This document shows, one piece after another, positions 5,174 to 59,649 of a DNA stretch of 64,000 nt. The stretch is from Mobula hypostoma (Eukaryota), in NCBI RefSeq assembly GCF_963921235.1, contig NC_086106.1, forward strand, positions 25,606,001-25,670,000, written 5' to 3'. Each line of letters opens with the position of its first letter. The first letter of the stretch is position 1. Under the pieces are notes generated by a model. That model did not search any database. It was not told the origin of the DNA and worked only from the letters and a program-made list of their open reading frames with translations. Both the position numbers and the translations under genes were made by a program.

Positions 5174-5187
5174 GCGCCCTCCAGTGA
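5174..5187 (-). promoter_or_regulatory. CTCF-like motif 3' of the V1 RSS
   Basis: TCACTGGAGGGCGC, 12/14 match to CCASYAGRKGGCGC, 24 bp past the nonamer. Confidence 0.6.
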
Positions 5188-5211
5188 GACCTTTTTGCAA
5201 TATACAGAATC

Positions 5212-5250
5212 AGTTTTTGCACGGACCCGCCGTCCCCATATAACAATGTG
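5212..5250 (-). other. Recombination signal sequence (23-RSS) of V1
   Basis: CACATTG + 23 nt + GCAAAAACT. Confidence 0.9.
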
Positions 5251-5673
5251 GAACTCATTGCACAGAGATACATGGCAGAGTCCGACACAAGAGCTTCACG
5301 GATATTCAATTGAGACGTCTTGCTGCCTTTCTCTAAAGTAGCGGTAATCCTCTCTGAATACTGCTGCGTTCCTCCTGTGCTATATAACTTCAGCAAATAA
5401 TTTGGAGGTCCTCCACTATGTTGAGTGTACCAAAAGATATATGCACTAGCATCGGTGTAACTACAGTTCAGTGTTATGTTCTGTCCTTCCTCAGTCGTTA
5501 CATCGGGAGGATCCTGCGTCACTGAATATTGCCCACTCGTTCCTGCAAGAAAGGACAAAATACATCAACAACACTGGCTTGTATAGAATGCCGGACAAAC
5601 TCGCTAGCCAGCTTCGCTGAGACTCACCAGGCAGCAGAGCCAGTACAATCAGCAATGAACAGAGGGAAATCAT
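5251..5673 (-). CDS. TRAV: TCR alpha/delta-type V gene segment V1 (leader 5628-5673, V exon 5251-5542), apparently functional
   Basis: Leader MISLCSLLIVLALLP/G, GT..AG intron of 85 bp, in-frame V exon with Cys23 (LNC), Trp41 (IFWY) and YLCAMS end, followed by a 23-RSS. Alpha versus delta cannot be resolved without J/C. Confidence 0.9.
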
Positions 5674-5739
5674 GCTGTCTAATTTCTGGCTGAATCGAAC
5701 GGCAGATTCCTTCCAGGGCGTTATGATCACAACAGATAT

Positions 5740-5876
5740 TGTGGTAGGAGATATTTTCAGCGATACCTTACACCTTGTGTAAAACCGGAGGTGTTTCTCT
5801 GGTTAAAAGATTGGCTGACAGAAAGAAACGAGCCTTCCTTAGCACCAATCAGAATCTGTTTTGTATCCATTCGTCA
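5740..5876 (-). promoter_or_regulatory. V1 promoter: RUNX-type site, two opposed CCAAT boxes, CRE half-site
   Basis: Plus-strand TGTGGT 5740-5745, ATTGG 5810-5814, CCAAT 5845-5849 and CGTCA 5872-5876. The block is conserved upstream of the other family-1 V genes. Confidence 0.6.
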
Positions 5877-5909
5877 TTCAACCTGTTTCTCAGCTCTTAC
5901 AATGTCCGG

Positions 5910-6057
5910 NNNNNNNNNNNNNNNNNNNNNNNNNNNNNNNNNNNNNNNNNNNNNNNNNNNNNNNNNNNNNNNNNNNNNNNNNNNNNNNNNNNNNNNNNNN
6001 NNNNNNNNNNNNNNNNNNNNNNNNNNNNNNNNNNNNNNNNNNNNNNNNNNNNNNNNN
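5910..6057. other. Assembly gap (N run); others at 11754-11892, 18148-18322, 23790-23954, 27784-27949
   Basis: Runs of N, mostly where paralogous cassettes have CT/GA-rich tracts. Confidence 0.99.
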
Positions 6058-6894
6058 CGCGCGCGCTCGTCCCCGCTCTCCCTAGTCAATTTCCCTGCTG
6101 CCACATTTTTCCTCGACTCCTGTCCTTTTGCTCTGTTTCTTTTTTCTCTGATCCCTACTGTCTAATCTACCTCTCTTTGTCTCAATCCATCACTTTTGCT
6201 TCCGCAATTCCTCGTCATCCTCCTAATCGTTTCCTTCCGTTTTTCTCACTCACTGACTCTTTCAAGTGGATGTGAAGATATTTGTTTTATCATTCCTTTG
6301 TACCACCTCGATAAGCTGTTCAAAGATTTGATCTCTTAAATTCCAGTCAATGCAATCATCCGACAGGAATAAACAAACATATCCAGCAAAATGCTGGTGA
6401 TAACATAAGATCCGTTAAATCTGTTTGGGAAACCAGATTATACAAGCTATCACTCTGTTGTGCTCCCATTCCCTCTCTCCCTCTCTCGCTCTCTTTTCTA
6501 CTGAAAAAGGCTTCATAATATAAGTTTAAGGGTGGTGTGCAGTCAAGTTTATGTACTTTAATCAGAAAGTTACTTTGAATATTGAACCTCTTTCGCTATC
6601 ACGCGAAACATTGGCAGGTTCTGTCGCATTATGTAAAAACTCAGTATAAATCAACGTAGCTGTTGCAACATCTTTAATGTCAGTAGCGTGCCACTTTGCA
6701 GTTCTTTGTCAATCCGAAGACCACCATTTTTCCCAACTGTGCTTTCCGTTCATCAGCAATTGCCCTATTTAAATATATCCTACTACCAATCCATTCTCAA
6801 TATTTCTCAGTCCATGGGTAATTTCTAGGTGCGCCCCTTCCAGATTCCCGGAAAAGACCCCCTCCAGTGAGAGTTTTTTTTACATTATACAGAA

Positions 6895-7327
6895 CCATTT
6901 TATATAGATAAAGATATATGCCAGTATTCGACACAACAGCTTCAAGAAAATTGAATTAGGCCGTCTAGTTGTCCTTCTGCAACTAGCGGTAAATCTCACT
7001 GGGCAATCTAGATGTCGCTGCATTATTGCTATGCCCTATAATTTCAGCGAATAATTTGGAGATTCTCCACAATGTTGAACGTACGAAAAGATAGTTGCAT
7101 CAGCTTAAATGTAATTACATTTTAGTGTTATGGTCTGTCCTCTCTCAGCCCTTACGTAGGGAGGATCCTACGTCACTGAATCTTTCCTGCGCGTTCTTGA
7201 AATATAAGACGCAGTAAATAAACATCGCTGTTTTCTTGTGACCGCATGGGAAATTCGGTGGCCACCTTCGCAGAGACTCAGCAGGCAGCACAGCCAATCC
7301 AATCCGTAACGAACAGAGGGAAGGCAT
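6895..7327 (-). pseudogene. V pseudogene psiV2 (family 1, RSS-deleted type)
   Basis: Donor GT changed to CT, in-frame TAG at 7168-7170 (Gln of VTQ), and Cys104, heptamer and spacer deleted. Confidence 0.85.
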
Positions 7328-12445: not shown

Positions 12446-12459
12446 GCGCCCTCCTGTGA
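12446..12459 (-). promoter_or_regulatory. CTCF-like motif 3' of the V3 RSS
   Basis: TCACAGGAGGGCGC, 24 bp past the nonamer. Confidence 0.55.
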
Positions 12460-12483
12460 GATTTTTCTTCATAATACGGCACT

Positions 12484-12522
12484 AGTTTTTGTCCGGACCT
12501 GCTGTCTCCATACAACAGTGTG
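12484..12522 (-). other. 23-RSS of V3
   Basis: CACACTG + 23 nt + ACAAAAACT. Confidence 0.9.
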
Positions 12523-12954
12523 GTACTCATTGCACAGAGATACATTCCAGAGTCAGACACAGGCGCTTCACTGATATCCAATTGAGCCGTCTTGCTCCCT
12601 TTCTGTAAACTAGCGGAAAACCTCAACGGGCAATCTGGATGCCGAAACATTCCACCAGTGCTAGATACCTGCAGCAAATAATTTGGAGGCTCTCCACTAT
12701 GTTGAATGTACCAAAAGATATACGCATCATCGTAAGTGTAAGTACAGTTCAGTGTTATGTTCTGTCCTTCCGTGGCCGTTAAGTCGGGAGGATCCTGCGT
12801 CACTGAATCTTTCCCACTTGCTCCTGCAAAAAAGGACAGAATACATCAACAACACCGGCTTGTATTGAACGTCGGGAAAATTCGCTGGCCACCTTCGCAG
12901 ACACTCACCAGGCAGCACAGACAATGCGATCATTAATAAACAGAGGGAAATCAT
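12523..12954 (-). CDS. TRAV: TCR V gene segment V3 (leader 12909-12954, V exon 12523-12823), apparently functional
   Basis: Leader MISLCLLMIALSVLP/G, canonical splice sites, open V exon LNC..IFWY..HPDCP..YLCAMS. Confidence 0.9.
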
Positions 12955-13022
12955 GGTGTCTAATTTCTGTTAGAATCGAACAGCAGGTTCCTTCCAGGAC
13001 GTGATTATCACTCAATAGATGT

Positions 13023-14642: not shown

Positions 14643-15534
14643 AAGCCAGATAACAAGAAGTTAATACCACAAATTTGAGAGAATGATGTCAGATACGCTA
14701 CACCCTTCACTTCGTGCAAACCCTGCCGTAATTTGTTTTGCTAACTCGGAGTTTAACTGTGGAATTCAGAGCTAAGCCTATTTAAGCACCGACGTGAATG
14801 GAACTGCTGCACTCTCTGCTTATTTATCATTCACTCTAACTATGTTATATTTTCCAATCTCATCCTTTCATTCTTCGTTCCATTTTAATTAACACTTCAT
14901 TTCTGGCATTGCATCTCCCTCTTTGTTCCCTATTTTGTTACTAGTTATAGTTCCGTCGCTATGTCACTCAATGGCTCTATGTCTGCCTTTGTATTCCAAT
15001 TTGCAATTTTAGTGAATTATCAATGTAGCTTTAAACTCGTTGTGGAAACATCTTTTAATCCAACGCCTATCCACTCTGTATTAATTTTCAAACAGTAAAA
15101 TAAACATCTATTTACCTGCACTTTTATAAACATAATGCTAGTGGACGCCACCTGAAATTTATCATCATCAGAAGCATTTAGTGTGACAGCATGTCCGATG
15201 CTGTCTGGTCATATACAACCTCAGCATCTCTAGGTGGCACTTATGTTCACCGTTAATTTCTCAAGGTAGTGAACACTGAAGTTCAGCAAACAATTAACCA
15301 CAAGATATTGTTATAGGCAACAGAGAGACATTGCCACCACCATATAGTAGAAATGCTTCGGAAAGCCGCCAAAATATCCCTAGCTAAAGCTAAATTCAAG
15401 AAGTGTTCCGCAAGTTTGGTCGCATTTTGCGGTTGAATGCAACATTTCAAATCGACCACGTGATCCTAATGCTTTCTGCGTACAGCTGTTGCAGATCACC
15501 AGCAAAAGGCGCCCTCTAGTGATCACGTAACCCT

Positions 15535-15990
15535 GGATTTTGTCAGATCGGCAACACTGCGCGGTCCATTATACAGAGATACTGTGTACACCAGAGTCAG
15601 GGACAAGAATTGCAGAGATACTTGTATGAGCCGACTCTGCGACTGTGCAGAACAGCTGTAACCCTAGCTGGACATTCTGAGGCAGCTCCAGTTTTCATCA
15701 GCCGTATAGCTTCAGCAGTTTTTAGGAGATTCTCCGCGATGCTGAGTGTATCAAATATGTTTGTCTTCATTCGTGTGTAACTGAATTTCAGTGTTATCAT
15801 CTGACTTTCGTCAGACGATAATTTTGGAGCATTCTGATCACAGAATTGTACTTCCTCGTTCCTGCAATAAAGGACAGAATGCAGTGACTTCCCTGACTTG
15901 CACTGAACTGCGCCTCGCTGGTCATGTGCGCAGAGTATTAGTTGTCAGAATGGCGAAAGAAACCACTAAGAGACTGAGGGACAAATACTG
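15535..15990 (-). pseudogene. Family-2 V pseudogene A
   Basis: Acceptor at 15861/15862, frameshifts, broken Trp41 region (TTTGATACACTCAGCAT), DSG remnant, nonamer ACAAAATCC. Confidence 0.75.

Positions 15991-17248: not shown

Positions 17249-17250
<2 letters not shown>

Positions 17251-17310
<60 letters not shown>
17251..17310. repeat. (CT)n microsatellite
   Basis: About 30 perfect TC units. Confidence 0.98.
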
Positions 17311-17319
<9 letters not shown>

Positions 17320-17359
17320 ATTTCTCTCGCACGCGAGAGGGATGTTTTGCATTATACAG

Positions 17360-17762
17360 AACCATTTTCATATAGATAGAGATATATGCCAGTATTCGAC
17401 ACTAGAGCTCCACGAAAATGTAATTAGGCCGTCTAGCTGGCCTTCTGTAACTAGTGGTAAATCTTACTGGACAATCTGGATGCCGCTCCATTATGGCTAT
17501 GCCCTCTAAATTCAGCAAATTGTTTGGAGATTCTCCACAATGTTGAATGTACGGAAAGGTAGCTGTGGTCTGTTCTTTCTCATCCGTTACATCGGGAGGA
17601 TCCTACGTCACTGAATCTTTCCCACACGTTCCTGAAATAAAGGACACAGTAAGTAAACATCGCTGTCTTGTATTGACCGCAGGGGAAATTCACTGTCCAC
17701 CTTCGCAGAGACTCAGCAGGCAGCACAGCCAATGCAATCCGTAATGAATTGAGGGAAAGCAT
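17360..17762 (-). pseudogene. V pseudogene psiV4 (family 1, RSS-deleted type)
   Basis: TAG at 17603-17605, donor GT changed to CT, same Cys104/RSS deletion as psiV2 and psiV6. Confidence 0.85.
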
Positions 17763-17924: not shown

Positions 17925-19992
17925 TTGAGGGAAGTATTCTGACTGGATCGAACGGCAGATTGTTCCAGGACGTAATTAACAAATATTGTGGTGTGAGGTC
18001 GTTTCAGTGATAGCTTCCACCTTGTGTAAGATCTGCTTTTTCGATTCTCTGACATAAGGTATCGAAGTCTTTCAGAGCAGCAAGCAGACCCTGCTTCATT
18101 TCTAATCGTCTTTCTACTCGTTTCTCCATTCTTTGCAGATCGCATGTNNNNNNNNNNNNNNNNNNNNNNNNNNNNNNNNNNNNNNNNNNNNNNNNNNNNN
18201 NNNNNNNNNNNNNNNNNNNNNNNNNNNNNNNNNNNNNNNNNNNNNNNNNNNNNNNNNNNNNNNNNNNNNNNNNNNNNNNNNNNNNNNNNNNNNNNNNNNN
18301 NNNNNNNNNNNNNNNNNNNNNNGTACTGTTTGGAGGATATCTCTGGAGGGTATGAATTTCGTGATGTATATTGTGCACATTCTCTGATTTTAAACGGAAC
18401 CACTGAAGAATGCTGGATAGGTTTTTCGCTGTACCCTGTTACACCTGGAAAAAAAAACAGAAAGTTAAGTAACATCACCAGTTTGAAGTCAGTATGAAGG
18501 TCTGCATTGTGAAGGAAGATATCAGGCTGTCCTGCAACTCATAGAATATCGGTTGAGCAGATAAATGGAGATGAATGACTGTAGGTTACCTATCTTGCAA
18601 TGCAGTGATACCTGGTGCCATATAACCAGGGATCCGGTGCGATTCCGATATTCCATTCGATCAGCAGATACGTGTGTGCTCAGTTTCCACATTTACCCCG
18701 TTAACATGTTTTCACGGTCCGATTAAAAGATGCTCTGGATAGCCCGTCCTCCTGATCGAAGTATCACTGAGGTACGTGTAACAGGAATTTGCGAAAATTG
18801 GACAGGCAAATCTGTAAACCATTATACGATAAGATGAAAGTTCAGAATTCTGCCAGTTTTTCCGATCGAGTCTGCTCCGCCATTTCAGAGGAAACAGTGT
18901 GGTGATGGAATTTTTCGGAACTCTAAACATACCATTAAAGTGAGAGTTTCAGAAGGTCGAAATATAGCTTTGGAAACAGATGCAATCAATTTCTGTTCCT
19001 TCTACAGCAATCGGTCGTTCTTTTTGTTTCTCTCTTCCATCTGAGGGAAAACACTGAAGTCTACAAGCACGTTCCAGTGTGCAGAAGTATACATTCTACC
19101 CGGTTGTAAGGATATTGAACTATAGGATGAAATTGAATCTCAATCCCAATCCACCTCAGTATGATTTATTCTTTATTTCCTGCCTGCGTTGCATTTTTAT
19201 ACGTTTCTTACCCTTTATTGTTGTATTAATGTTGTTATATATACACCAAAATGCTCCACGTGGCGATTACATCGGATCCGTTAAATGTGGTTGGGAAACC
19301 AGATTATACAAGGTATCACTCTGTTGTCATCCCATTCCCTCTCTTCCTCTCTCGCTCCTTTATTCTGAAAATGCCTTCAAAATATGAATCTCGGGGTAGC
19401 ATGCTAGCGCCTATATGTATTTTAACCACGAAGTTATTTTCAACACTGAACCCCTTTCACACAGCACGGAAATACTCCGACTAGCATATTATCTGCATCC
19501 ACTATCACGCTAACCGTCGGAAGGTTCTGTCGGATTATCTAAATGTTCAGTATAAATAATGAGTAGCTGTTACATCTTCCTTAATTTCAGTGGGTTTTTA
19601 ATTTCTGGGCTTCGGTAGCATGCCACTTGCAATTCTTTGTCATTCTGAATAGCACCAATTTTGCCATCCTCTGTTTTCCATTGACCACTTTAAATATATA
19701 CCGGTTCCACTCCTTCCATATTATTTTTCTGTGCAAACAAACGAACAAAGTGGCCAAAGGCAATATCAGTCAGGGCTGTCCATCGTTATATATCCTCTCA
19801 GCAAAAGAAGATGGGCGAATGCACATTGCTTTATTCAGGAAATGAATTGCTACTGTTCAGTTCACTTCCGCCTTGTAATCAGAAACTTCCTTCAGCTTCG
19901 GCGCCTTGTGCTGCTGCTTACAGTGCTCTTCCGCAGGGCACGTGACCATGGATGATTTCCGGGTGCGCCCCTTCCAGATTCGCCGCGAACAG

Positions 19993-20006
19993 GCGCCCTC
20001 CTCTGA
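19993..20006 (-). promoter_or_regulatory. CTCF-like motif 3' of the V5 RSS
   Basis: TCAGAGGAGGGCGC, 24 bp past the nonamer. Confidence 0.5.
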
Positions 20007-20030
20007 GAGCTTTTGGCATCATACAGGACT

Positions 20031-20069
20031 AGTTTTTGTCCGGACCCGCCGTCGCCATACAACAGTGTG
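20031..20069 (-). other. 23-RSS of V5
   Basis: CACACTG + 23 nt + ACAAAAACT. Confidence 0.9.
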
Positions 20070-21760: not shown

Positions 21761-23124
21761 TGATCCTGGACGGCACGCTCTGACGGATTCGCCAGATTCA
21801 CCAAGCAGAGTAGTAAGTACAAAGAACCTCGTAGCGGGATCATGGTGATTTGAATAAAATAAACAGAGGAAAATTTGAAGATATTAATCCGATAAAAGAG
21901 AAGTGAATCAAGTTAGTTTAACAAGAGACTTTCCGGGAGACTCGGCGCTTTAGCTTCGATGTATATTCGTCTTTCTTTCCTAAATTAGGGGATTATAGCA
22001 ATCATAGGGATGTGAGTGGCGTTAACTAACTGCTCTTCTCTCTCCCTCTCTCGCCCTCTCTCTCTCTCTCGCACGCGTACGCTCGCCCTCGCTCTCCGCA
22101 CTCATTCTCCCTGCTGCCATATTTTTCCTCGCCTCCTGTCTTTTTGCTCTGTTTTTCTCTCTTATCCTTACTGTCTTATCTCCCTCTCTTTGTCTCAATC
22201 CATCACTTTTGCCTCCGCATCTCTTCGTCATCCTCCTATTCGTTTCCTTCCGTTTTTCTCCCTCACTGACTCTTTCAAGTGGATGTGAAGGTATTTATTT
22301 TATCATTCCTTTGTACTACCTCGATAAACTGTTCAAAGATTTGTTCTCTTAAATCCCAGTCAATGCAATCATCCGACAGGAATAAACAAACATATACAGC
22401 AAAATGCCCCACGTGGTGATAACGTCAGATCCGTTAAATCTGTTTGGGAATCCAGATTATACAATCTATCACTCTGTTGTGCTCCCATTCCCTCTCTCCC
22501 TCTCTCGCTCTCTTTTCTACTGAAAATGGCTTCATAATATATGTATATGGGTAGTATGCAGTCATGTATATGTACTTTAAATATGAAGTTACTTTGAACA
22601 TTGAACCTCTTTCGCTATCACGCGAAACATTGGCAGGTTCTGTCGCATTATCTAAATACTCAGTATAAATCAACGTAGCTGTTGCAGCATCCTTAATGAC
22701 AGTAGCATGCCACTTTGCAGTTCTTTGTTAATCTGAAGACCACCATTTTTCCCACCTGTTTTCAGTTTGCCAGCAATTGTCCTATTTAAATATATCCTGT
22801 TTCCAATCCATTCTCATTATTTCTCGCTGCAAACACTCAAACAATGTGTACATAGACAATGTCCGGCAGTGTTGTCAATCGTGGTATGCAATTGCAGCAC
22901 AAGAGATTGGGTGAAAAAACATTGCCGTACCCCGGAAATGCATTGTAAAATTCCAGTTTATTTGCGCATTGGTATCACGAACTGCTCCTCCAGATTCTGA
23001 GCTGTCTGCTGCTGATTTCAGCAAACTGAACCAGGGCACAAGTCAATGACTGATTTCTGGGTGCATCTGTCCAGTTTCCCGGAAAAAGGAACTCTGCAGT
23101 GAGGACTGTTTTGCATTATACAGA

Positions 23125-25800: not shown

Positions 25801-25839
25801 AGTTTTTATCCGGACCCGCCTTCTTCATACAACAATGTG
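25801..25839 (-). other. 23-RSS of V7
   Basis: CACATTG + 23 nt + ATAAAAACT; CTCF-like motif at 25763-25776. Confidence 0.85.
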
Positions 25840-28990: not shown

Positions 28991-30666
28991 TGGAGACTAC
29001 ATATTTCAGGTTTTGCACTGTGCCCATTCTCTGATTTTAAAAGCAACCGATGAAGCATGCTGGACGTTCTTTTGTCTGTACTCTGGTATGTCTGACAACA
29101 ACAAAATATATGATAAACGTAAACCAGTTTGGGGTAACTGTAAGCGTCTGCAAAGTGAAGGAATACATCCGGCTGTCTTTCATTAACTCAGAAAATATCG
29201 GTTGAGCGGGGAAGTGGCGATAGTTGTGTACTGCAGAGTGCCTGTCGCGGAAACCTGGCGATCTCTACTGTTATTTCACCAGGGATCCAGTTGGAATATG
29301 ACATTTTCGATGCTGCCAGCATAATTCTTCTGGGCTCAGATTCCACGTTTTGTGCGTTACCATGTATTACATTGCCCGCAAAAGACGTTCTGGGTAGCAT
29401 GTGCCAGAGATCGGAGGATCACTGAGTGTGTACGTTAAGAGGAATGTGCGACAATTGGACCGATAAATCGGTTGAAAATAAGACCATAAGAATTGAGGAA
29501 CTGAATTAGGTCACTTGACCTATCGAGTCTCCTCCACCATTTCAGAAGAGACAGTGTGGTAATGGAATTCTTCGACACAGTAAACATATAATTAAAATAA
29601 CAGTTTCAAAAAATCGAAATATACCTTTGGAAACAAAAGCTATCACTTTGTGCTCCCTCGGTAGTAATCTGACGTTCCCACTCTTTGTTTCTTCGATGGT
29701 GAGCTGATTCAAAGTTCTAAAAGCAACAATAGATTATTTCCTCTGCAAGAATATTGAACGGTAGGATGAAATTGAATCTCAATTCCCATCCACCTCGGTA
29801 TGCCCTTGCTCTTTAATTCCTGCCTGCCCTGCATTTTTATATGGCTCTTAGAATTTATTTTTTTGCATTCTTTTATTGTTTAAATTTGTACTATCTCCAT
29901 AAAGGGTGTAGTGAATTCATCTGTAAAAACCGAATCAAGCCAATCATGTGACAATAATAAACAAATTTCTATCCAATTTACATATGCAGCGAACATCACG
30001 TGGCGATAAAATTAGATCAGTTAAATCTGGTCTGGAAATCAGATTGTGCAAGCAATCGCCCTGTTTGATTCCATTCCTTCTCTCGTCCCCTCGCTCTCTT
30101 TTACACTGAAAATGTCTAAAAAAATATGAATCTCGGGGTAGTATGCGATCGCGTATATGTAGTTTAATCATAAATTTACTTTAAATTGTGAACCTCTTTC
30201 TCACAGCTACGACCAAAATAGTATCTGCATTCTCTATCACGCTGAGCATCCACTGGTTGTGTCGCATTATCGAAATTTCCAAAATGCACAATAAGTAGTT
30301 TTTTTTTTCCCAACATCCTGACTTTCATTAGCGTGCCACTTGCAATTCTTCATCAATTGGAAAATCGCCAATTTTGACACCATCTGGTTTCCTTTAGTCA
30401 GCCATTGTGCCATTTAATTATATTCTGGTTGCATTCCATTCTCATTATTTCCCACTGCAGACACTCGAAAACAGTGGCATAACACAAGTTCAGACATGGG
30501 TCTTAATCGTGATATGCGGTTGCAGCAACAGAGCGTGGGTGAATGCAGATTCCGATATCCCAGAAAGTTGTACAGTTCCAGTTTGGGTTCGCGTTGTAAT
30601 CAGCCCCTTCGAGTTTGGTCGCAAAACGACACCCTCCAGTGAAAGCTTTTAGCATTAAACAGGACC

Positions 30667-31135: not shown

Positions 31136-32779
31136 AGTGTTTACTTTCCGGCTGAAGCGAACGGAGATTCCACCCAGGCCGTTATTATCACTTAATAGAT
31201 ATTGTGGTGTGAGATCGTTTCATCAATACCTTTCACGTATTCTAAGAGCGGGGGCGTTTCAGCTGGTTAAAGCATTGGCTGACACAATGAAACGAGCCTT
31301 TCTGAGCACCAATCAGCAGTTGCTTTGTTTCGATTCGAGGTTCTGCCTGTTTCTTCACTCTTTCAACGTCCCGCATTCATCCCCGCTCCTCTCTCTTTCC
31401 TCTCTCTTTCTTTCTCTCTCTCTCTCGATCTCGCTCTCTTTGTTGTCTCTCTCTCTTTCCCAGCGTGCCCTACTTCCTCGGTTTCCCAGTTCTCTGCACG
31501 TTCACTACACAGACTTATCAATGTGTAATCGATCACAAGACTTTTCATGTTGTCGCTTCTTCAACATCAGCAATATCTCGCTGGAAGTAGTTGATGTATT
31601 TATGTATTTATTTGTTTTGTTTGTTAGTTATTTAAAGACCCTAAAGTAGGCCCTTAAGACAATATGTTTCAGTCCCTTGGCATTGAACTAGTTTTTCAAA
31701 TGTCTGCAAGATTTATTCCTTAAGATTTGTATGCTGTTAGGGAGGCATCTCCTATCCACGCCAATAGACTCCTGACAGCACACTTTCTGTAGCCAACACA
31801 TTCTTCCTTAATAAAACAACTCACATCTGGCATCCTCCTATCATATCATACACAGCTATTAAACTACCCTCATCTTCTAAAATTTCAAAAAGAAAGGTCT
31901 TTGCTCGCAAAACTGAAATGTCCCATGGAATATCAAAACACTTGCGAATGTGTAACTGTAGCTCAGCATTACAACTTGTTCTATCTTAAGCATCGATGCA
32001 GAGAGATAAGTCTCTCCCCTACGAGACACACACTATTTGTGCAAAGATTCGCCGGGCAGCTAAGTCAGTAAGGATCAAGGAAGGACATGGTGTCTGATTT
32101 CAGGCACGATCTAAAGCCAGATTACATCGAACAAGCTAACACCACAGACCTGTGAGAATAGTGTCAGATACGCTGCACCTTTCACTTCGTTTAAAATCTG
32201 CATAAATTGCTCTGCTAAATGGGAGCTGAACCGTGGAAGTCAGAGCTGAGTCCATTTAGCCACCGGTCTGAATGGAACTACTACGTTCACTGTCTCTTAA
32301 ACAATCTCTCTAATTTTATTCTATTTGTCGCTCTCATCCCTCCCTCCTTCGTTGCACTTTTACTGACTGTTCATTTCTAGCAAATGCAATTCCTTCTCTA
32401 TTCTCTCTTCCTATACTGTCCTATATTTCCGTCGTTGAGTTTCTCAATCGAACTCTGTTTGCCACTGTATTCCGATCTAGTTTATTTTTGTTGACCTCCA
32501 TACCCCCACCGTCCATCTGTCTCTCCACAAGATATTGTTAACGACAGGATATTGTGATAGGGAACAGAGAGACACATGGACACCGAGATATAGTGGAAAT
32601 GCTTCGGGTAGCTGCCACAATATCCTTAGGTAACCCGGAATTCAAGAAGTGTTCCTCAATGTTGTGCGCATTTTGGCGCTGAATGCAGCGTTTTAAGTTG
32701 ATCACGTGATCCTCATACTTTGTGAGTCCCGCTCTACCAGTTTCCCAGCGAATGCGCCCTCTAATTATCACGCCAGCCT

Positions 32780-33250
32780 GGATTTTGTCCGGACCCAATG
32801 TCTCCTTGCTAATCCTGAAGGGTCCATTGCACAGTGGTATATGCCAGAGTCTGGCACAAGAACTTCAGAGATATTTAAATAGCTGACTCTGCTTTTTTGT
32901 GCATATCAGCTTTAAACCTCGTCGAACATTTTGGAGGCCGTTCCAGTTTTGCTGGACCATATACCTTCAGCAGTCATTTTTAGAGATTTGCCACGAGACG
33001 GAGTGTATCAAAAATGCTTGCATTAGTTCATGTGTAATTGCAATTCAGTGTGATGATCTGACTGTCGTCAGCTGTTCATTTAGGAGCATCCTAAATTATT
33101 GAATCTTTCTCTCTCGTTCCTGCATTAAAACACAGAATTCAGTAATATCCCTGATGTGCACTGAACTCATGTTTCATTCCTTGGTCATATGTAGAGCGTC
33201 TTACCTGTCAGGATGGCAAATGTAATCAATAAGAAACAGAGGGAACACAT
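32780..33250 (-). pseudogene. Family-2 V pseudogene B
   Basis: Leader MCSLCFLLITFAILT/G intact (33205-33250), early TAG, Trp41 lesion, YHCAMDP end, heptamer degenerate. Confidence 0.8.
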
Positions 33251-43860: not shown

Positions 43861-44829
43861 CACTGTCATTCCGCAAGCAAAGCAGCTGTCTAACTAACTG
43901 AACAATGTAGTCAGTAATTTTTCGCCTTTCCCCTGCAGTATGCTCCTAAACCCCCGATCAGCTCCATTGGGCTTCCCGTCGTGCCAAAAAAAAAGCCTTA
44001 TAACTCTTACATGTAACACACTGAAGTCAGAAGAGGACTCTCTTCCTTGAGGAAGAGCACCACTTCAACACTTCAGGCTCTCCACCAGTCTCTCTCATTC
44101 CACATGTTCACAAAATGCCACTCATCGGTATCTGAGAGGTCTTCTCCACCAAGGCCTCATAGTTCTGCTCCCCCTCGAGGGTGTGCTTCACTTCCTTGAG
44201 CATTATCAGCCTATGATAACATTGTTCCTTCGCCGTTTATTTATGCAGGAGGGACTGTAAGTGCTGATAGCAACTCAGAATTTATGCAGGAGGGAACGTA
44301 AGTGCTGATAGCACCTCAGAATTTTTCCCCTGGCAGAGGACTCATTAGATGCACTACATCAGACAACTCTTGCCTTTCACTCCGGAGCAAAGACAACAAC
44401 TTGTCTTTGAAGTCTCCGCCCTGAATTACGAAAAACACTACGTCCAGTTCTGCACCCTCACCTACTCTCCCCTCTGCTTTGTAGGTATGAGCGGCCCATG
44501 GCTCAGCTTCTCGCGGGACCACAATATTACTAGAAAGATCAACTGCCGTCACATCTTCCGTAGCCTGAACGAAATTGAAATTTTTGCTCACTGCTTGTAC
44601 AAGCTGCCAACTTTACTGAGCTTTGCTCCATCCGTTTCGCAACGAAGGGCAGAATCATTCAGCATCCAGACACAGTGCTTAACCCAGGAAACTTTCGGGT
44701 ACTATGAGAAATTCATCAGACACAATGACGAATTTAACTGGAAAAAAGACACTGACAAGGTCAGCTGGGTTCGTGCGAAATCGGGTTTACTACTATTTCT
44801 AGCTTTTGCATTTATAATTCCCTCCGCCC

Positions 44830-44831
<2 letters not shown>

Positions 44832-44898
<67 letters not shown>
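44832..44898. repeat. (CT)n microsatellite
   Basis: About 33 CT units. Confidence 0.98.
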
Positions 44899-44904
<6 letters not shown>

Positions 44905-46249
44905 CCTTTTCCCCTCTCGATTTACATTTTCTGGCCGTTTACTGTCCTATCTATATCCTTTTCTCTGTATGACTCTCGGTTTTTCTACTCCATCACTCCC
45001 ACTTCGTGAGGAACTACACGGATGCTTACGTAGAAAGATAACATTCACCTCGAGCGAGATATCTAGCCTGTGTGATTTACTCATACTAATTAGCAGACAA
45101 GGGAACATACTACAGGTCAGGATATATGCCATAATGGGGGCATTTTATCAGGCAATGCACTGCTAATCGATTGTGTTCTGCTGGCGTCAGTTTGTCTCCG
45201 ACACTTGCTGATTGAGGTAATATCAGAAAAGTTTAGACTGTACGATGTGATTTTATTCAGTCTTAAATGCATGAAATTTTGAATCAAAAAGTAAAAATAT
45301 TTTGTGAAATACTGTCTTCTTCATGCGGAGATTAAAATTTCAGAACTTTCATGGGGACTGTGATCTAATTTGTGCAGTTGATCAGTGGGATTGTTTTATG
45401 CGTACACACAAGATTAAAATTATAGTGGTAAAAGAATCTATGCTTTCATTCCTTACTTCGACAGGAAACTGGACAGTTTTCCCGTCGTGCAGGTGATACA
45501 CAGTATACAAACACAATTTCTACTCTGAGATTATAAAAGTAATGGACTGCAGGATGAGATCATCTTTTAACCCCCAATGCACCAATTGTGGCCTGACGCT
45601 GTTTTGCCATTCATTATTTTGTTAAATTTGCTGTCCTTTTATTCTACGTTCCAACATTGTTGACCTTGTACTCTCTCGTCAAACAGTGCAAATAATTGAT
45701 CTATATGATCGGAACCAATTCAACCATTCACAGTATGTTGACACATTTGACTAATGCAATTCTAACTTGGATATTTAACAGGATATTGGAAGGAAACCGT
45801 CCTCATTGACAAATCTATTCCGGAGATATCAAACACTCTTGTTTTGTCCTGTCTTGTCACTCTTATTCTTTCCTCAGAGACTGTGAACGCTTCTATCACA
45901 ACTGCATCCGTGAAATCTATCATCCAATACATCCCCAGTTGCTCCCACAATGATCCGAGCAAACTGGTAAAAGACAATGTTGAGCACAGTTGACAAACGT
46001 GATATGGCATCCCATGCAAAAGTGCGTTTTTAGATACTGTAGATATACAAGTAATGGATTGTAATGCTTTCATTTGTGTTGAACGCAAGAACGGCAATCA
46101 AGCTTGACAGTTTTGCTACTGAGCGCCTCCCATTTAAGTCGACCGCGTAATATTACTGATATCTGTGTTCGCCCCTTTCCATTAACTGTGAAAACACACT
46201 CCACTGACACTTAGTGCATCACCCAGAACTTTCTTTTCGTACTAACCCG

Positions 46250-47810: not shown

Positions 47811-49778
47811 GCTTTGGGCTTCTGGCTTATTCGAAAGGCATATTAGTTCCAGGCAGTTACTATCAATTGATAGAAGGAGAGAGATGATGATCAACGGCAC
47901 TCTTCACTTTGATTAGGATCGGGCATATTGCCCTACTGAATTATTCGCTGATCAAAAGGGGCCCAGACTTTCTGAGCACCAGTCAGAATCTATGTTGTTT
48001 CAGATTATCGCTCATCGTGTTTTGATGCTCTTAAAGAAAGTACTTATAGCAGAGTGGTAGAAACTGCACTTAAAACTCGAGGTACATGCTTTCAACATTG
48101 CATGTTCTCCTTTTGGAGACAATGGGGTTACCAGTGGGAGGAGAGAACATCGACTATTTGCTGATGCTGTCTGCCAGATGTGCAGACGGAGTCCAAACCA
48201 CAGAGAGTGGTTTTCGTGATGTGTCTTCAGTTGCTTGATGAATAGCATAGCGGTTTGCGCGACTTTGTTAAATCTGGGATCTTCGGAGTTCAATGTTCAA
48301 TTCCGGCGTTTGCAAGGCGTCTGGACGTACAATGGTTGCAATCATTGTTGACTTTTTGCTTTCAGTCCAAATCCTTGAGTTTCTTCCCACAGTGCAAGTT
48401 AGGTTATTGGGTCATTGTAAGTTGATCCATGAATAATAAGTATTAAATATGGGTTGTCAGGGTTTGCTACGGCGGTGCGAGTTAAAGGCATACTCTGTGC
48501 CGTATCGCGCAGAAAACAAGTAAATGAATATCCAAATATCGCGAAAATGGAATGTACAGTTCCCATATGGGTACGTCTTCAAACGAAGAAGTGATGTTCA
48601 GTCTTGAAAACACTTTGTCACTGAGTGTTTCAGTCTTATATCTAGTAGTTGTGTAACACCAGGGGTGTTTCCCTGGTTAAAAGATTCGTTGACACAATGA
48701 ACGGAGTCTTTCTGAGCGCCAATCAGAATAGGCTTTGTTTCCTTTCGTCATTCTGTTCCTTTTACCGTTCTTTCAAGGTCCCGTGCCCCTTTCCCCCAAT
48801 CTCTCTCTTAGTGTGCCCTTCTGCCTCTGCCACGTATTCTCTGCATACTCACAGCATATCCACATACTTCTCGATGTGTAATCTAGAACAATTCAGACTC
48901 GATCTAATGCCAGATTACATCCAAAAAACTAATACCACAGATTTGCGAGAATGATGTGAGATACGCTTCACCGTTCACTTCGTGTAAACCTGCGTAAATT
49001 TCTCTGCTAATTGAGAGTTGAACCGGGCAATTATGAGCAGAGCCTATTTAACCACCGATCTGAATGAAAACGCTACGTCTCCGTTTATCAACCATTCTCT
49101 CTAATATTATTCGATTTGTCTTTCTCACCCTTCCCTTCTTCGTTCTAATTGAATTGACCGTTCCTTTCTAGCAAAGCATCTCCTTCTTTGTTCTCTCTTT
49201 CGTTACTCTGCGATTATTCTTCGCGGTGTCTCTCAATCGCTCTGTGTCTGCCTCTGTTTTTTAATCTGCAATTTTTTCTAATTCATCAATTTCACTAGTT
49301 GTCGGAACATCTTTTATTCCATTGCCAGTCCAATCGGTATTCATTTTCAATCCTAAGAATAAACATCCATTTAACTCCACTTTTAGGGATCTAATGCCAA
49401 TGGACTCCACCTAAAACGTATCTTAATCAGAAGCATATAGCGTGATAGCTAATCCGATGCTATCTAATCATATACATCCTCATTCATCTTCACCGTTAAT
49501 TCCTAAGAGTGATGAAATTGATATCCAGCAAAAAAAAACACACACTATATTGTTATAAGCATGAGAGAGAGACATGGACACCGAGATATACTGGAGATGT
49601 TTCGGTAAGCTGCCAGAATATACCTGGGGAAAGCTGAATTCAAGACGTGTTCCACAAGGTTGGGGGCATTTTGCTGCTGAATGCAGCGTTTGATGTCGAC
49701 CACGTTATCCTCATCCATTGCGTGTACAGCTCTTCCAGGTTACCAGCAACAGTCGCCCTCTTGTGATCACATAAGGCT

Positions 49779-50245
49779 GAATTTTGTCCGGATTCGCTGC
49801 CTCACTGCAATAATTCGGGGTGTATTGCACAGTGGTATACGCCAGAGTCAGAGACAACACTTCCGGAGATATTTAAACGAGCTGACTCTGCGTTTGTGCA
49901 TATCAGGTGTAAACTTCGCCGGACATTTTGGAGGCCGCTCCAGTTCTCCTGAGCCATATACCTTCAGCAGTTTTTTTGGAGATTTTCCGTCATGCTGAGT
50001 GTATCAAAATGTTTTCATTAGTTCGGGTGGATTTGCAGTTCAGTGTTGTGATTTGACATTGGTCAACCAGTAATTTAGGAACATCCTGGATCACTGAATT
50101 GTTCCCACTAGTTCCTACAATAAAGGACAAAATGCAGAAATATCCCTGACTTGCACTGAACTCACGTCGCACTCGCTGGTCATGTGTACAGCGACTTACC
50201 TGTCAGGATGGCGAATGCAATCAACAAGAAACACAGGGAAAACAT
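49779..50245 (-). pseudogene. Family-2 V pseudogene C
   Basis: Leader MFSLCFLLIAFAILT/G (50200-50245), exon GTSGNNSVIQD..LNCK, frameshift at Trp41, DSGVYHCAIH end, heptamer lost. Confidence 0.8.
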
Positions 50246-51310: not shown

Positions 51311-52433
51311 GGAGCTAGACCCAAGTGTAGGAGGGGCGCCAGAATGCAGTGAACCTACAGGACATGCTCCGACCGATTATACAGATTCAGTACATGCTCT
51401 GACCGATTATATAAAAGTAGTGGATACAAAGAACCTCTAGTACGTGGCTGTAGTGGGAATATGGTAGATTGAATAAAGTTAACGAGGATGATTTGAAGAT
51501 ATTCCTCCGGTAAAAGAAAAGTATTTCAAGTGGGGACAATCAACACTTTCTGGGAGACTCGGCGCTTTCTTTTCGAAGTATATGTGGCTATTATTTCTAA
51601 CTTAGTGCATTATAGCAATGATAAGAATAGACTGGAGTTAATTTACTCCCCCTGCCTCCACCACCATCCACACCTCGCTCTCGCTCTCGCCCACTCTCTT
51701 CGCCCTCATTCCCTCCGCTATAGTTTTTTTTTTCTCGCTTTCTCTCTTTTACTTGTACTATTTGTCTTTCTCTTTCAGTCTGGTGTCTCTCTCTCTGTCT
51801 CAATACATCGCTTTTGCCTTCGCCTCCCTCCGTCATCCTCCTATTCGTCACCTGCTGTTTCTCACTGTCACTGTGAGAGTTAAAGTAGGAGTTAAAGTAC
51901 TGTTACAATCGATATCTGTATTCTCTATCACGCTAAACTTTCGCAGGTTCTGTCGCATTATCTAAATACTCAGCATAAACCATAAGTAGCTGTTGCAACA
52001 ACCTTAATATTAGTGCCGAGCCACTTGTAATTCTTTGTCATTCAGAAGACCACTGATTTTCGCACTTCGTGTTTTCCTGTTTTCAGCCATTATCCAGTTT
52101 AAATATATCCCGCTTACACTCCATGCTCATTATGTCTCACTGCTGACACTCGAATAAAGTGGCCAAAGGCAATGTCAAGGAAGGTTGGCAAGATTGGTAT
52201 GCCGTTGCAGCAAAACGAGCATTGGAGAAAGCACACTGCGGTATCCGGAAAAATGCATTTAGAAGTTCCAGTTTAGAGCGCATTGTAATCAAGACCTGTT
52301 CCATTAGATTCGGCCACTTGCATTGCTGATTGTAGCGCGCTTACGTAGGAGACTTGAGCATGGCTGCTTTCCAGGTGCCACCTTCCAGTTTCTCGGGGAA
52401 AAAAAGCGCCCTCCATTGAGAGCTTTTAGCATT

Positions 52434-53600
52434 ATCATCATCATCAACATCACCATCATCATCAGGTGCTATGCCCAGTTTGAGCTTTGACTGTTATGGC
52501 CCCATGCTCCTGTTTCAGGCCAAGTGAATCAATTCATTGATATTCATTTCCAGTTCTCTGGCTGCTGTATCCATCATCATTTGTCTTTGTTTCCTTTTGC
52601 TTCTTTCCTTCAATGTTTCCCATAATTACCGTGCATTCTAACTCCTCTTTCATAATCAAATGTCCAATGAAGTTTCTTCAGTTCGCGCAATGGAAGGCAA
52701 TAGCAAACCACCGATACTAGGTTTCCAAGAATCTATTTGCTAAGAAACCCACGGCCAAACTCACAAAATGTATACCAGAATAGCAGCGTGAAGACGATCT
52801 TCAAGACAGTTCTGAAGATGTTTCGCTCTGTAGGGTTAACTCTGGGCAGCAGGGGATCCCAGACCGTCATCAAGCTATAGCTCATAAAATTTAAGCAATG
52901 CAAAAGAAAATTATTGCCACTTGGAATGTAAGAGCACTATATCAATCAGGAACATTGGGCAATGTGATAAATGAAATAGAAAGACTAACAATTACCTTCA
53001 AGGGAATTAGCGGAGTACGCTGGACAGGTGATGGAGCATGTCAGAATAGAAATAAATCAGTACTTTGTTGTTGTGTAATATTCCATACTAATTGAGTATG
53101 ATTTTTTATGGATGAAAACATGGCAAAAAGTGTTTTAGGACATTGGGTGATATCAGAAACAGTGCTCCTTGTTAGATTCGAGGACAAACATTTAATTTAA
53201 CAGATATACAGGTATATGCACCAACAACAGATGGAACAAATGAGGATATAGTTAATTTCTATGAACAGCTTGAATAAGCAAAGAATGGAAGCAAATCCCA
53301 AGATATTGTTACTGTCATGGGAGATCGAAATGCTAAAATAGGACAAGGTGCTGATAGAAATACCATTGGAAAATTTGGTCGAGCGGAAAGAAATGAAAGA
53401 GGCGAGAAATGGGTGGAACAGTGCTAGATGAATAATCAGGTCATTATGAATGCCTACTTTAAAAACCATCCAAGACCCGTGTGGATCTGGAAAAGTCCAT
53501 GTGATTGCACCAGCAAGCAAATTGACTTTATTTTTGCATTATACAGGACAGTTTTATACAGATGCAGATACATGCAAGAATTCGACCCAAAAAGCTTCAT
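52434..53600. mobile_element. RTE-clade LINE with inverted architecture
   Basis: 52434-52665 is a minus-strand 3' end with an (ATG)n tail. 52670-53540 is the plus-strand 5'/endonuclease part (IATWNVRALYQSG, QVYAPT, KSP..QIDFI). Confidence 0.75.
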
Positions 53601-57150: not shown

Positions 57151-57164
57151 GCGCCCTCCAGTGA
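57151..57164 (-). promoter_or_regulatory. CTCF-like motif 3' of the V9 RSS
   Basis: TCACTGGAGGGCGC, 23 bp past the nonamer. Confidence 0.6.
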
Positions 57165-57187
57165 GAGCTTTTGCATCACACCTGATA

Positions 57188-57226
57188 AGTTTTTGTCCGA
57201 ACCCGCCGTCCCCATACAACAGTGTG
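57188..57226 (-). other. 23-RSS of V9
   Basis: CACACTG + 23 nt + ACAAAAACT. Confidence 0.9.
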
Positions 57227-57657
57227 GTACTCATTGCACAGAGATACATGCCACTGTCCGATACAAGAGCTTCAGTGATATTTAATTGAGCCATCTTGCT
57301 GCCCTTATGCAAAGTAGCGTTTAATTTCACTGGGCAATCTGGATGACGATCCAGTCGTCCTGTGCTATATAACTTCAACAAGTACTTTGGAGGTCCGCCA
57401 CTATGTTGAATGTACCAAAAGATATCTGCGTCAGCGTAAGTGTAATTACAGTTCAGTGTTATGGTCTGTCCTTCCTTAGCCGTTAGGTCGGAAGGATCCT
57501 GCGTCACTGAATCTTTCCCACTCGTTCCTGCAAAAAAAAATGACACAATACGTCAACATTGGTTGCATTCAACGCGAGGGAAATTCACTGACCTGCTCTT
57601 CAGAGACTCACCAGGCAGCACAACCAATGTAATCAGTAATGAACAGAGGGAAATCAT
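57227..57657 (-). CDS. TRAV: TCR V gene segment V9 (leader 57612-57657, V exon 57227-57527), apparently functional
   Basis: Leader MISLCSLLITLVVLP/G, 84-bp GT..AG intron, open exon LNC..IFWY..HPDCP..YLCAMS. Confidence 0.9.
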
Positions 57658-57722
57658 GGTGTCTAATATGTGGCTGGGTCGAGCAGCAGATTGCTTCCAG
57701 GCAGGTATCACTTAACAGAAAT

Positions 57723-57861
57723 TGTGGTGTGAGATCGTTTAGGCGATATATTTTCATCTTGCGTAAATCCAGGGGGCGTTTCCCTGGTTAACGGATTGGC
57801 TGACAGAAAGAACCGAGCCTTTCAGATCGCCAATCAGAATCTGCTTTGTTTCCATTCGTCA
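57723..57861 (-). promoter_or_regulatory. V9 promoter block
   Basis: TGTGGT 57723-57728, ATTGG 57795-57799, CCAAT 57830-57834, CGTCA 57857-57861. Confidence 0.6.
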
Positions 57862-58985
57862 TTCTGCCTACTTCTCCGCTCTTTCAATATCCCGAGTTCA
57901 CCCCCCCCCCCACCCCGCTGCATTATCGTTTATTTATCAATGTGTAATCCAATACAATTAAGACTTTTCACGTGTTCGCTTTTTCAAATCCGACTGTATC
58001 TGGCTGGAAGTAGTTGATCTATTTGTTTATTTATTTGTTTTGTTAGTTGGTTATTGAAGATATATCCTACAGTAGGCCCTCAAGTCAATATGTTTCATTC
58101 TTCCAGTATTGCACTAATTATTCAAATGTCAGCAAGATTTATACCCCAACCTCTGTTTGCTGTTCGGGAGCCAATCTCCTATCCACGCCAATAGACTCCT
58201 GACAGCACACTCTGTGTAGTGACCACTTTCTTCGTTAAATAACTCACATCTGGCATTCCCCTTGTAATTTCTTCCAATCGTCCTGTGATATCGTCCTCTA
58301 GTATGTGCCACTTCCAACCTTAGGTCAAAGTGCTAGTTGTCCACGTTACCTATGCAGGTGTGTAACTGAAGTTCAGCATTACGATTCATTAACTTTTAAT
58401 CGTCGATGAGAAGAGATAAATCTTTCCCACACGATTCTATAACAAGACAAAACGACTGAACGTCCAGTGCTCGCATTGCAGCTGCGAGACACCCACTGAC
58501 AATCTGTGCAAATGTTAGCCGGGACAGCAAAGCCCATAATATCATTAAGGATCTTGAAACTCATGGAGTCTGCATTCTGGTGCGATCTAAAGCCAGATGG
58601 TACACAATAGGCTAATATCACAGGCTTGCAAGAATGTTGTCAGATACGCTGCATCCTTCCATTCGTGTAAAACCGGCGTAAATTGCTCTGCTAAATGGGA
58701 GCTGAACCGGGTAAATCAGAGCTGAGCTTATTTAGCCAGCGATCTAAACGAAACTGCTACACTCTCTGTTTCTTAATCATTTACTCTAATTATATTCTAT
58801 TTGTCGAACTCACACCTCCCTCCTTCGGTCGACTTTAAATGACACTTCACTTCGTGCAACGGTTCTCCTTCTTTATTCCGTCTATCGGATTTATCCTATA
58901 TTTCCATCGCTCTGTCACTCAATCGCTCTCTGTTCGCCTCTGTATTCAAAGCTAGTCCGTTTTTGTCTACTCCATACCCCCACCA

Positions 58986-59038
<53 letters not shown>

Positions 59039-59649
59039 CTCTTTCTCTCTCTCTCGCTCACTCTTCACTTCGCTCTATTCACTGCTTGCATAGGCAGCCA
59101 CCACAATTCAATCTCCATTTGTTTTCTAAGTCATCATTTTAGATTTTAACTAACTGGGGGAACATCCTTTAACTCATTGTCAGTTCACTACGTATTCATT
59201 GTGAATCCGAAAAAATACCATCCATTACTCTCCACTTTTAGCAAGCTAATGTCAATTGAGTCTACTTGAAATTTATCTTCATCAGAAGCGTTTAGCGTGA
59301 CTGCTAATCCGATGCTATCTAGTCACATACGCCCTCTGTATGTCCACGTTGAACTCATCTTCACTGTTAACCTTTTAAGGTGGTGAGAAATGATTTCCAG
59401 CCAAACGTTGACCACAAGATATTGTTCCAGACAACAGAAAAAGACATGGACACCAAAGATATCGTGGAAATCTTTCCGAAAGCTGTCACAATATCCCTCG
59501 CTAAAGCTGAATTCAAGAAGCATTCCTAAATGTTTGGAGAATTTTGCTGCTGAATGCAACATTTTAAGTTGACCAAGTGATGCTCATGGTTTGTGCATAG
59601 GCTGTGCTAGTTTCCCAGCAAAGGCGCCCTCTAGTGATCAAGCAAGGCT

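What the first reader, a model, noticed from the sequence alone, without database searches (positions are those of the whole stretch)
5174..59637. RSS-proximal, uniformly oriented CTCF-like elements across a cartilaginous-fish TCR V array
Seen: a 14-mer matching the CTCF core CCASYAGRKGGCGC at 11-13/14 lies just 3' of the RSS. In family 1 it is 23-24 bp past the nonamer (5174-5187, 12446-12459, 19993-20006, 25763-25776, 57151-57164). In family 2 it is exactly 12 bp past the nonamer (15509-15522, 32754-32767, 49753-49766, 59624-59637). It is always on the V coding strand, and it is conserved across two families whose other flanks have diverged. Established: in mouse Igh, D-proximal VH genes carry CTCF elements immediately 3' of the RSS that promote recombination during cohesin loop extrusion, whereas mouse Tcra/d V-associated CTCF sites lie mainly upstream near promoters. 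Inference: this locus may use an Igh-like RSS-CBE scanning code in a TCR locus, which would point to an ancient jawed-vertebrate mechanism. I do not know of this being described for chondrichthyan TCR, but I could not search the literature.
Basis: partly seen in the sequence, partly recalled or inferred. Interest (0 to 1): 0.8.

Follow-up and report, generated by a model that had tools for sequence, protein, structure and literature searches.

The report
CTCF-like box behind ray TCR V signals
Each T-cell-receptor V segment in this ray window has a short conserved DNA box just past its recombination signal. The box looks like a docking site for the genome-folding protein CTCF and recurs in a skate and a whale shark, but only a third of the copies here are strong matches and binding is untested.

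Summary
All nine 14-mers are at the stated coordinates, on the V (minus) strand, 23-24 bp (family 1) or 12 bp (family 2) past the nonamer.

- **Specificity:** the core GAGGGCGC occurs 9 times in the window, always on the minus strand and only in V 3' flanks.
- **Conservation:** it is the best-conserved block of the flank. Across ray family 1, ray family 2 and two little-skate V lineages it is the only invariant run longer than 2 (0 of 100,000 shuffles).
- **Other species:** all 3 little-skate V segments carry a strong copy 24 or 31 bp past the nonamer. One of 4 whale-shark V segments carries a related box at 24 bp. The sampled bamboo-shark, skink, frog and Danionella V segments do not, apart from 1 of 13 in Danionella.
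- **Limits:** by a CTCF weight matrix only 3 of 9 copies are strong, and all three sit on long-dead family-2 pseudogenes. The five intact family-1 V segments carry a weak variant. Protein binding is untested.

Best reading (about 55%) is an RSS-adjacent CTCF element pointing towards J-C, placed as at mouse Igh proximal VH segments. My data place its age at elasmobranchs, not all jawed vertebrates. The scan had already noted the same motif in at least seven other windows of this genome. I found no published description.

The parts
5174..5187 (-). Box, family 1 (TCACTGGAGGGCGC), 24 bp past the nonamer; 7.3 bits
12446..12459 (-). Box, family 1 (TCACAGGAGGGCGC), 24 bp past the nonamer; 5.5 bits
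19993..20006 (-). Box, family 1 (TCAGAGGAGGGCGC), 24 bp past the nonamer; 7.0 bits
25763..25776 (-). Box, family 1 (TCACAGGAGGGCGC), 24 bp past the nonamer; 7.6 bits
57151..57164 (-). Box, family 1 (TCACTGGAGGGCGC), 23 bp past the nonamer; 9.2 bits
15509..15522 (-). Box, family 2 (TCACTAGAGGGCGC), 12 bp past the nonamer; 17.5 bits, joint strongest CTCF-type match in the window
32754..32767 (-). Box, family 2 (TAATTAGAGGGCGC), 12 bp past the nonamer; 2.6 bits, 5' half degraded
49753..49766 (-). Box, family 2 (TCACAAGAGGGCGA), 12 bp past the nonamer; 13.0 bits
59624..59637 (-). Box, family 2 (TCACTAGAGGGCGC), 12 bp past the nonamer; 17.5 bits
52406..52419 (-).
30629..30642 (-). Decayed box (TCACTGGAGGGTGT, CpG changed to TpG) behind a frameshifted family-1-like V (30711-30984) that keeps an intact 23-RSS
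6857..6870 (-). Decayed box (TCACTGGAGGGGGT) behind V pseudogene 6964-7176, RSS largely deleted
23089..23102 (-). Decayed box (TCACTGCAGAGTTC) behind V pseudogene 23197-23408
5212..5250 (-). 23-RSS of family-1 V (heptamer CACATTG, nonamer GCAAAAACT). Sister RSSs at 12484-12522, 20031-20069, 25801-25839 and 57188-57226
5253..5522 (-). Family-1 V exon, open frame, ends YLCAMS. Sister exons at 12525-12803, 20072-20341, 25842-26111 and 57229-57507. V-set domain; best solved-structure matches are all TCR alpha chains
32825..33090 (-). Family-2 V remnant with stops, frameshifts and no CAC heptamer. Sister remnants at 15645-15836, 49823-50009 and about 59690-59990. A frameshift shared by all four shows the family was already dead before it duplicated
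5120..5125 (.). CACGTG E-box 59-62 bp from the box start. Also at 12393, 19939, 25709, 57097 (family 1) and 15457, 32703 (family 2). Lost in 49753, 59624 and 52406, and absent in skate
5082..5095 (-). Second CTCF-like box about 92 bp 3' of the first, family 1 only: GCAGCAGAAGGCGC, 14.7 bits here. Weaker copies at 12355, 19901, 25671 and 57059

Best explanation
The box is a selectively maintained cis-element that travels with TCR alpha/delta-type V segments of elasmobranchs. It is most likely a CTCF-binding element. It lies 12-31 bp past the V 23-RSS, on the V sense strand. If the V segments are in the usual deletional orientation, the motif therefore points downstream towards J-C.

Inferred mechanism:
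1. In thymocytes, CTCF bound at the box stalls cohesin that is reeling V-region chromatin past a J-based recombination centre.
2. The adjacent RSS, or nearby V segments, is held there for RAG capture. The boxes also divide the V array into loops.
3. The element sits on the signal-end side, so it leaves with the excision circle once its own V has joined.

Shown here: position, strand, conservation and motif similarity. Inferred: CTCF binding, the direction of J-C, cohesin stalling and any effect on V usage.
For: - GAGGGCGC is found only in V 3' flanks: 9 of 9 occurrences, one strand.
- Cross-family identity peaks at the box. It is 0.81 for the 14-mer, against 0.4-0.7 in the flanks and 0.77 at the Cys codon and the nonamer.
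- Across ray family 1, ray family 2, skate V1 and skate V2, the only invariant run longer than 2 in 198 flank columns is the 8-mer (0 of 100,000 shuffles).
- The four best CTCF-matrix hits in the whole window (17.5, 17.5, 14.7, 13.0 bits) all lie in these modules on the V strand.
- In little skate, 3 of 3 V segments have 17.1-17.5-bit sites 24 or 31 bp past the nonamer. One is the identical 14-mer TCACTAGAGGGCGC, although the 24-bp linker and the downstream flank are unalignable. These are the only hits of 11 bits or more in that 13.5-kb locus, apart from the reverse-strand reads of the V1 and V3 sites.
- Whale-shark V_36791 has ACACCAGAAGGCGC 24 bp past its nonamer, on the V strand.
- Skate TAD boundaries carry oriented MA0139.1 CTCF motifs, so the mammalian matrix applies to batoids (PMC10115646).
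- Mouse Igh proximal VH segments have such elements just 3' of the RSS, and 129 of 144 mouse Tcra/d sites point towards J-C.
Against: - The five intact V segments carry a variant with G at the near-invariant A and T at the first C (5.5-9.2 bits, p about 1e-4 per position). That is no better than scattered background hits in the window.
- The strong sites sit on family-2 pseudogenes that cannot rearrange.
- In batoids the box is invariant at three positions where the CTCF matrix is degenerate (R, K, R), yet it varies at positions where CTCF is strict. That pattern suits a factor reading GAGGGCGC at least as well.
- Within family 2 alone the box is not significantly better kept than its flank (0.86 against about 0.76 pairwise).
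- There are no binding or 3D-contact data, and J-C is outside the window.
It does behave as expected on the skink and skate loci.
Confidence: 0.55

Rival explanations
1. The box is bound by another sequence-specific factor, for example a different zinc-finger protein reading GAGGGCGC. It would be part of a small V-downstream regulatory module together with the CACGTG E-box and the second box. The module would control local accessibility or germline transcription of the RSS rather than loop extrusion.
For: In batoids the core is invariant at positions where the CTCF matrix is degenerate, and it varies where CTCF is strict. An E-box lies at a fixed 59-62 bp offset in 7 modules, and a conserved CAGCAGCA block follows. 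Family-1 copies score poorly as CTCF sites.
Against: The family-2 and skate copies match the CTCF core at 13 of 14 positions and score 17 bits. The whale-shark copy departs from GAGGGCGC (it has GAAGGCGC) but still fits the CTCF consensus at 12 of 14 positions. The E-box is not kept in skate or in two family-2 copies. No alternative factor could be named or tested with these tools.
Confidence: 0.25
2. The box has no present function. It would be a relic of the ancestral duplication unit that has survived by chance, slow elasmobranch substitution rates or gene conversion.
For: All copies descend from one ancestral V flank, so position and strand are inherited rather than independent. Within family 2 the box is only marginally better kept than its flank. 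It decays in three pseudogene copies.
Against: An 8-bp run containing a CpG is invariant across four lineages whose flanks are 40-50% different or unalignable, and across two batoid orders. In skate V2 the linker and downstream sequence are unrelated but box and spacing are kept. Gene conversion would homogenise the flanks as well.
Confidence: 0.1
3. The box comes from a transposable element that carries a CTCF motif, as SINE B2 does in rodents, and that happened to land next to V genes.
For: CTCF motifs are often spread by repeats. A GAGGGCGC also occurs in a LINE-like 3' end in the skate locus.
Against: All 13 module copies in the window are V-linked, on one strand and at a fixed distance from the nonamer. 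There are no dispersed or opposite-strand copies, no Rfam match and no excess secondary structure.
Confidence: 0.03

Closest known systems
CTCF-binding elements just 3' of the RSS of mouse Igh D-proximal VH segments (7183, Q52 and related families; VH81X element)
   Same: Both lie within 100 bp 3' of a V 23-RSS. Both are on the V sense strand and uniformly oriented, and both recur on many V segments of an array.
   Different: This is a TCR alpha/delta-type V array of a ray, not an Ig heavy-chain locus. In mouse the functional V segments have the element and pseudogenes lack it. Here the intact V segments have the weak variant and an old pseudogene family has the strong one. Binding and function are unproven here.
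Mouse Tcra/Tcrd V-region CTCF sites
   Same: Same type of locus. Most sites have one orientation, 129 of 144 pointing towards J-C.
   Different: Mouse sites are mostly upstream of V promoters or intergenic. In this window no repeated CTCF-type hit lies upstream of the V segments. The skink V array fetched here shows the amniote-like pattern, with strong V-strand motifs about 0.8-2.1 kb 3' of each RSS.
Oriented CTCF motifs at little-skate TAD boundaries (Marletaz et al. 2023)
   Same: Same motif model (MA0139.1) in a batoid, with an orientation code implying loop extrusion.
   Different: Those are megabase-scale domain boundaries found in fin tissue. Antigen-receptor loci were not addressed there.

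Membership tests
CTCF-binding element (by motif) | Match to the core CCASYAGRKGGCRS / MA0139.1 above a usual calling threshold (the skate paper used a score of 8) | tested here: inconclusive
One family-1 copy scores 9.2, four score 5.5-7.6, and 32754 scores 2.6. The orphan copy scores 5.1. Skate copies score 17.1-17.5 and the whale-shark copy 10.7.
CTCF-binding element (by motif) | Motif conserved above its flanks | tested here: met
   Peak of cross-family identity. It is the only invariant run longer than 2 across four lineages, with 0 of 100,000 shuffles matching it.
CTCF-binding element (by motif) | CTCF and cohesin occupancy in vivo | not testable with these tools
   No ChIP, CUT&RUN or ATAC data are available here.
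Igh-type RSS-proximal V element | Lies within about 100 bp 3' of the V RSS | tested here: met
   12 or 23-24 bp in the ray, 24 or 31 bp in skate, 24 bp in whale shark.
Igh-type RSS-proximal V element | Motif oriented towards the D/J recombination centre | tested here: inconclusive
   The forward motif is on the V sense strand in every copy. J-C is not in the window, so the direction is inferred from the usual deletional layout.
Igh-type RSS-proximal V element | Present on recombining V segments, absent or vestigial on pseudogenes | tested here: not met
   Three family-1-like pseudogenes do have decayed boxes. However, the four family-2 pseudogenes, which have no CAC heptamer, hold the three strongest boxes, and the intact family-1 V segments hold the weak variant.
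Igh-type RSS-proximal V element | Loss of the element lowers use of that V segment | not testable with these tools
   Needs repertoire data or mutagenesis.
Mouse Tcra-type promoter-upstream CTCF site | Site upstream of the V promoter | tested here: not met
   No recurrent hit of 10 bits or more upstream of the V exons. The only upstream hit is one 9.3-bit match at 13662.
Repeat-borne CTCF site (SINE/TE) | Dispersed copies, in both orientations, independent of the host gene | tested here: not met
   blastn of the module finds only V-linked minus-strand copies.

The most novel reading that the evidence does not exclude
Coupling a CTCF site directly to the V RSS was the ancestral layout of translocon-type antigen-receptor V arrays. 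It survives in elasmobranch TCR alpha/delta V segments and in mouse Igh proximal VH segments, and was moved to promoters or intergenic positions in amniote TCR alpha. If so, loop-extrusion scanning by RAG is as old as large V arrays. The strong boxes kept on dead V segments would then be retained as pure loop anchors.
Probability: 0.15. Interest if true: 0.85.

Novelty: new variant of a known kind. Interest (0 to 1): 0.6.

Why it matters
RSS-adjacent CTCF elements are the best-supported cis-code for RAG chromatin scanning, and so far they are known from one part of one mammalian locus. A conserved, co-oriented equivalent behind TCR V segments in rays, skates and a shark would show that this coupling is old and not specific to Ig heavy chains. 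It would also give a natural series of strong, weak and decayed sites to test against V usage. Finding strong sites on dead V segments raises a further question: whether V pseudogenes are kept as carriers of architectural sites.

Tried and rejected
- **RNA gene or structure:** no Rfam family in the window. The modules fold no better than shuffles, with z of -0.4, -0.2 and +1.2.
- **Transposable element:** no V-independent copies of the module.
- **CpG-island or hypomethylation argument:** CpG observed/expected is 0.71 window-wide and 0.77 at the module, so there is no island. Dropped.
- **The search for homologous proteins with the V exon:** no hits. The exhaustive search was needed instead.
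- **Loci that could not be fetched:** white shark, GCA_036365525.1 and the Mobula assembly returned no DNA because the files are too large. P0078 and P0006 are not on record.
- **Box-2 scoring:** it used the wrong register. The valid scores are those.
- **Other open frames:** large ORFs in the V-poor stretch (37659-38750, 39794-40408, 44349-44972 and others) have no Pfam family.
Full report
**What is in the window.** The minus strand carries an array of TCR alpha-type V segments.

- Family 1 has five members with open V exons ending YLCAMS and canonical 23-RSSs (CACA[CT]TG, 23 bp, ACAAAAACT). They are V-set domains, and their best solved-structure matches are all TCR alpha chains.
- Family 2 has four members, and all are pseudogenes. 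They have stops and frameshifts in every frame, a frameshift shared by all four (so the family was dead before it duplicated), and no CAC at the heptamer. The nonamer is kept.
- tblastn and blastn found further family-1-like remnants at 6964-7176, 17379-17611 (cut by a GA microsatellite), 23197-23408 and 30711-30984. They also found an orphan 3' module at 52195-52435 that has lost its V and RSS.

**The observation.** They lie 23-24 bp (family 1) or 12 bp (family 2) past the nonamer.

- The degenerate pattern is enriched: 34 hits against 20.2 +/- 4.7 in shuffles.
- The exact core gives a cleaner result. The ninth reader site reads GAGGGCGA.
- The five N gaps are at least 350 bp from any V exon, RSS or box, so the finding does not depend on them.

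**Conservation.** The two families' flanks are not fully diverged. They align for about 130 bp past the box and share a CACGTG E-box 59-62 bp from the box start. Family 1 also has a second CTCF-like box about 92 bp downstream.

- The box is still the peak. Cross-family identity is 0.81 for the 14-mer, against 0.4-0.7 in the flank and 0.77 at the Cys codon and the nonamer.
- Three decayed pseudogene copies have lost the core, two of them at its CpG.

**Other species.** An exhaustive protein search with the V exon and contig look-ups gave loci from six identified species.

| Species and locus | V segments with a box | Detail |
|---|---|---|
| Little skate, GCA_028641065.1 (identity confirmed) | 3 of 3 | 17.1-17.5 bits, 24 or 31 bp past the nonamer |
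| Whale shark, GCF_021869965.1 | 1 of 4 | ACACCAGAAGGCGC at 24 bp, 10.7 bits; a paralogue has a decayed copy; two V segments of another family have none |
| Bamboo shark | 0 of 2 | none |
| Skink | 0 of 8 | strong V-strand CTCF motifs about 0.8-2.1 kb 3' of each RSS, the amniote Tcra-like layout |
| Spadefoot frog | 0 of 12 | none |
| Danionella | 1 of 13 | 13 bits at 30 bp |

- One skate copy is the identical 14-mer TCACTAGAGGGCGC, although its 24-bp linker and downstream flank cannot be aligned to the ray.
- An unidentified shark-like metagenome contig (L006) has only TCACTG left at the same offset.
- Across consensus sequences of ray family 1, ray family 2, skate V1 and skate V2, the only invariant run longer than 2 in 198 flank columns is the 8-mer GAGGGCGC. 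None of 100,000 shuffles gives a run that long.
- The element is therefore under constraint and predates the skate-ray split. A related box at the same offset in a shark suggests an elasmobranch-wide origin for at least one V lineage.

The matrix gives the expected 17-23-bit hits in the skink locus.

- Family-2 copies score 17.5, 17.5, 13.0 and 2.6 bits.
- Family-1 copies score 5.5-9.2 bits, because G replaces the near-invariant A and T replaces the first C. The orphan scores 5.1.
- The four best hits in the whole window all lie in these modules on the V strand.
- Against shuffled flanks, family-1 copies reach p of 0.01-0.05 each. Two family-2 copies have no shuffle as good in 2,000.
- In favour of CTCF: the full 13-of-14 match in family 2 and skate, the whale-shark variant that stays within the consensus, and the oriented CTCF code already shown in skate (PMC10115646).
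- Against: the weak variant on every intact V segment; invariance at matrix-degenerate positions with variation at strict ones; the strongest sites sitting on V segments that cannot rearrange; and no binding data.

I put CTCF at about 55%, another factor or a composite module at about 25%, a functionless relic at about 10%, a transposable-element origin at about 3%, and the remainder undetermined.

**Comparison with what is known.** Mouse Igh proximal VH families have bound CTCF sites within 100 bp of the RSS. Mouse TCR alpha/delta sites are mostly upstream of V promoters, with 129 of 144 pointing towards J-C (PMC5859386 Table 2). Proximal VH pseudogenes lack the element (PMC7930373).

The ray, skate and whale-shark layout matches Igh in position and strand but sits in a TCR locus. 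It does not follow the Igh rule that functional V segments have the element and pseudogenes lack it. Full-text searches found no paper linking CTCF to RSSs in cartilaginous fish.

Three of those were followed up. I re-tested their claims of recurrence in skate and whale shark and confirm both. The whale-shark copy is only a moderate match.

**Verdict.** The box is a real, conserved, RSS-adjacent, co-oriented element. It is plausibly a CTCF element used in the Igh manner, but this is unproven. The evidence dates it to elasmobranchs rather than to all jawed vertebrates.

Noticed in passing
window 15645-15836, 32825-33090, 49823-50009, about 59690-59990 (minus strand): Family 2 is an old V pseudogene family with a shared frameshift and a lost heptamer. 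Its 3' flank (0.70-0.90 identity) is better kept than its V end and RSS (0.33-0.67). It also carries the window's strongest CTCF-type motifs.
   Followed up: partly
window 5120, 12393, 19939, 25709, 57097, 15457, 32703: A CACGTG E-box lies at a fixed 59-62 bp from the box start in 7 modules, out of 19 CACGTG in the window. It is not kept in skate.
   Followed up: partly
L002 (skink GCA_029204185.1) 9810, 15669, 19511, 23658, 27253, 30437: Strong V-strand CTCF motifs (15-23 bits) recur about 0.84-0.92 kb or 2.0-2.1 kb 3' of V RSSs. This is the promoter-side or intergenic, co-oriented layout described for mouse Tcra.
   Followed up: partly
L007 28934 and L005 14095 (whale shark and bamboo shark, another V family): The two shark V segments share a different conserved 3' flank past the nonamer (TTTCTGGGTCACAGCTG, containing a CAGCTG E-box) and have no CTCF-like box.
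   Followed up: no
window 17250-17320: A long GA microsatellite truncates the 3' flank of V pseudogene 17379-17611, removing its RSS and box.
   Followed up: no
window 37659-38750 (minus strand): A 363-aa ATG-started ORF in the V-poor stretch between 34 and 49 kb has no Pfam family. Its nature is unknown.
   Followed up: partly
window 63407-63889 (plus strand): Reverse-transcriptase fragment (RVT_1, E 6e-13) of a retrotransposon at the window's end.
   Followed up: partly
window 5910-6057, 18148-18322, 23790-23954: Three of the five N gaps lie 350-540 bp upstream of a V exon. That is where the leader or promoter would be, so the 5' ends of those V genes cannot be judged.
   Followed up: partly
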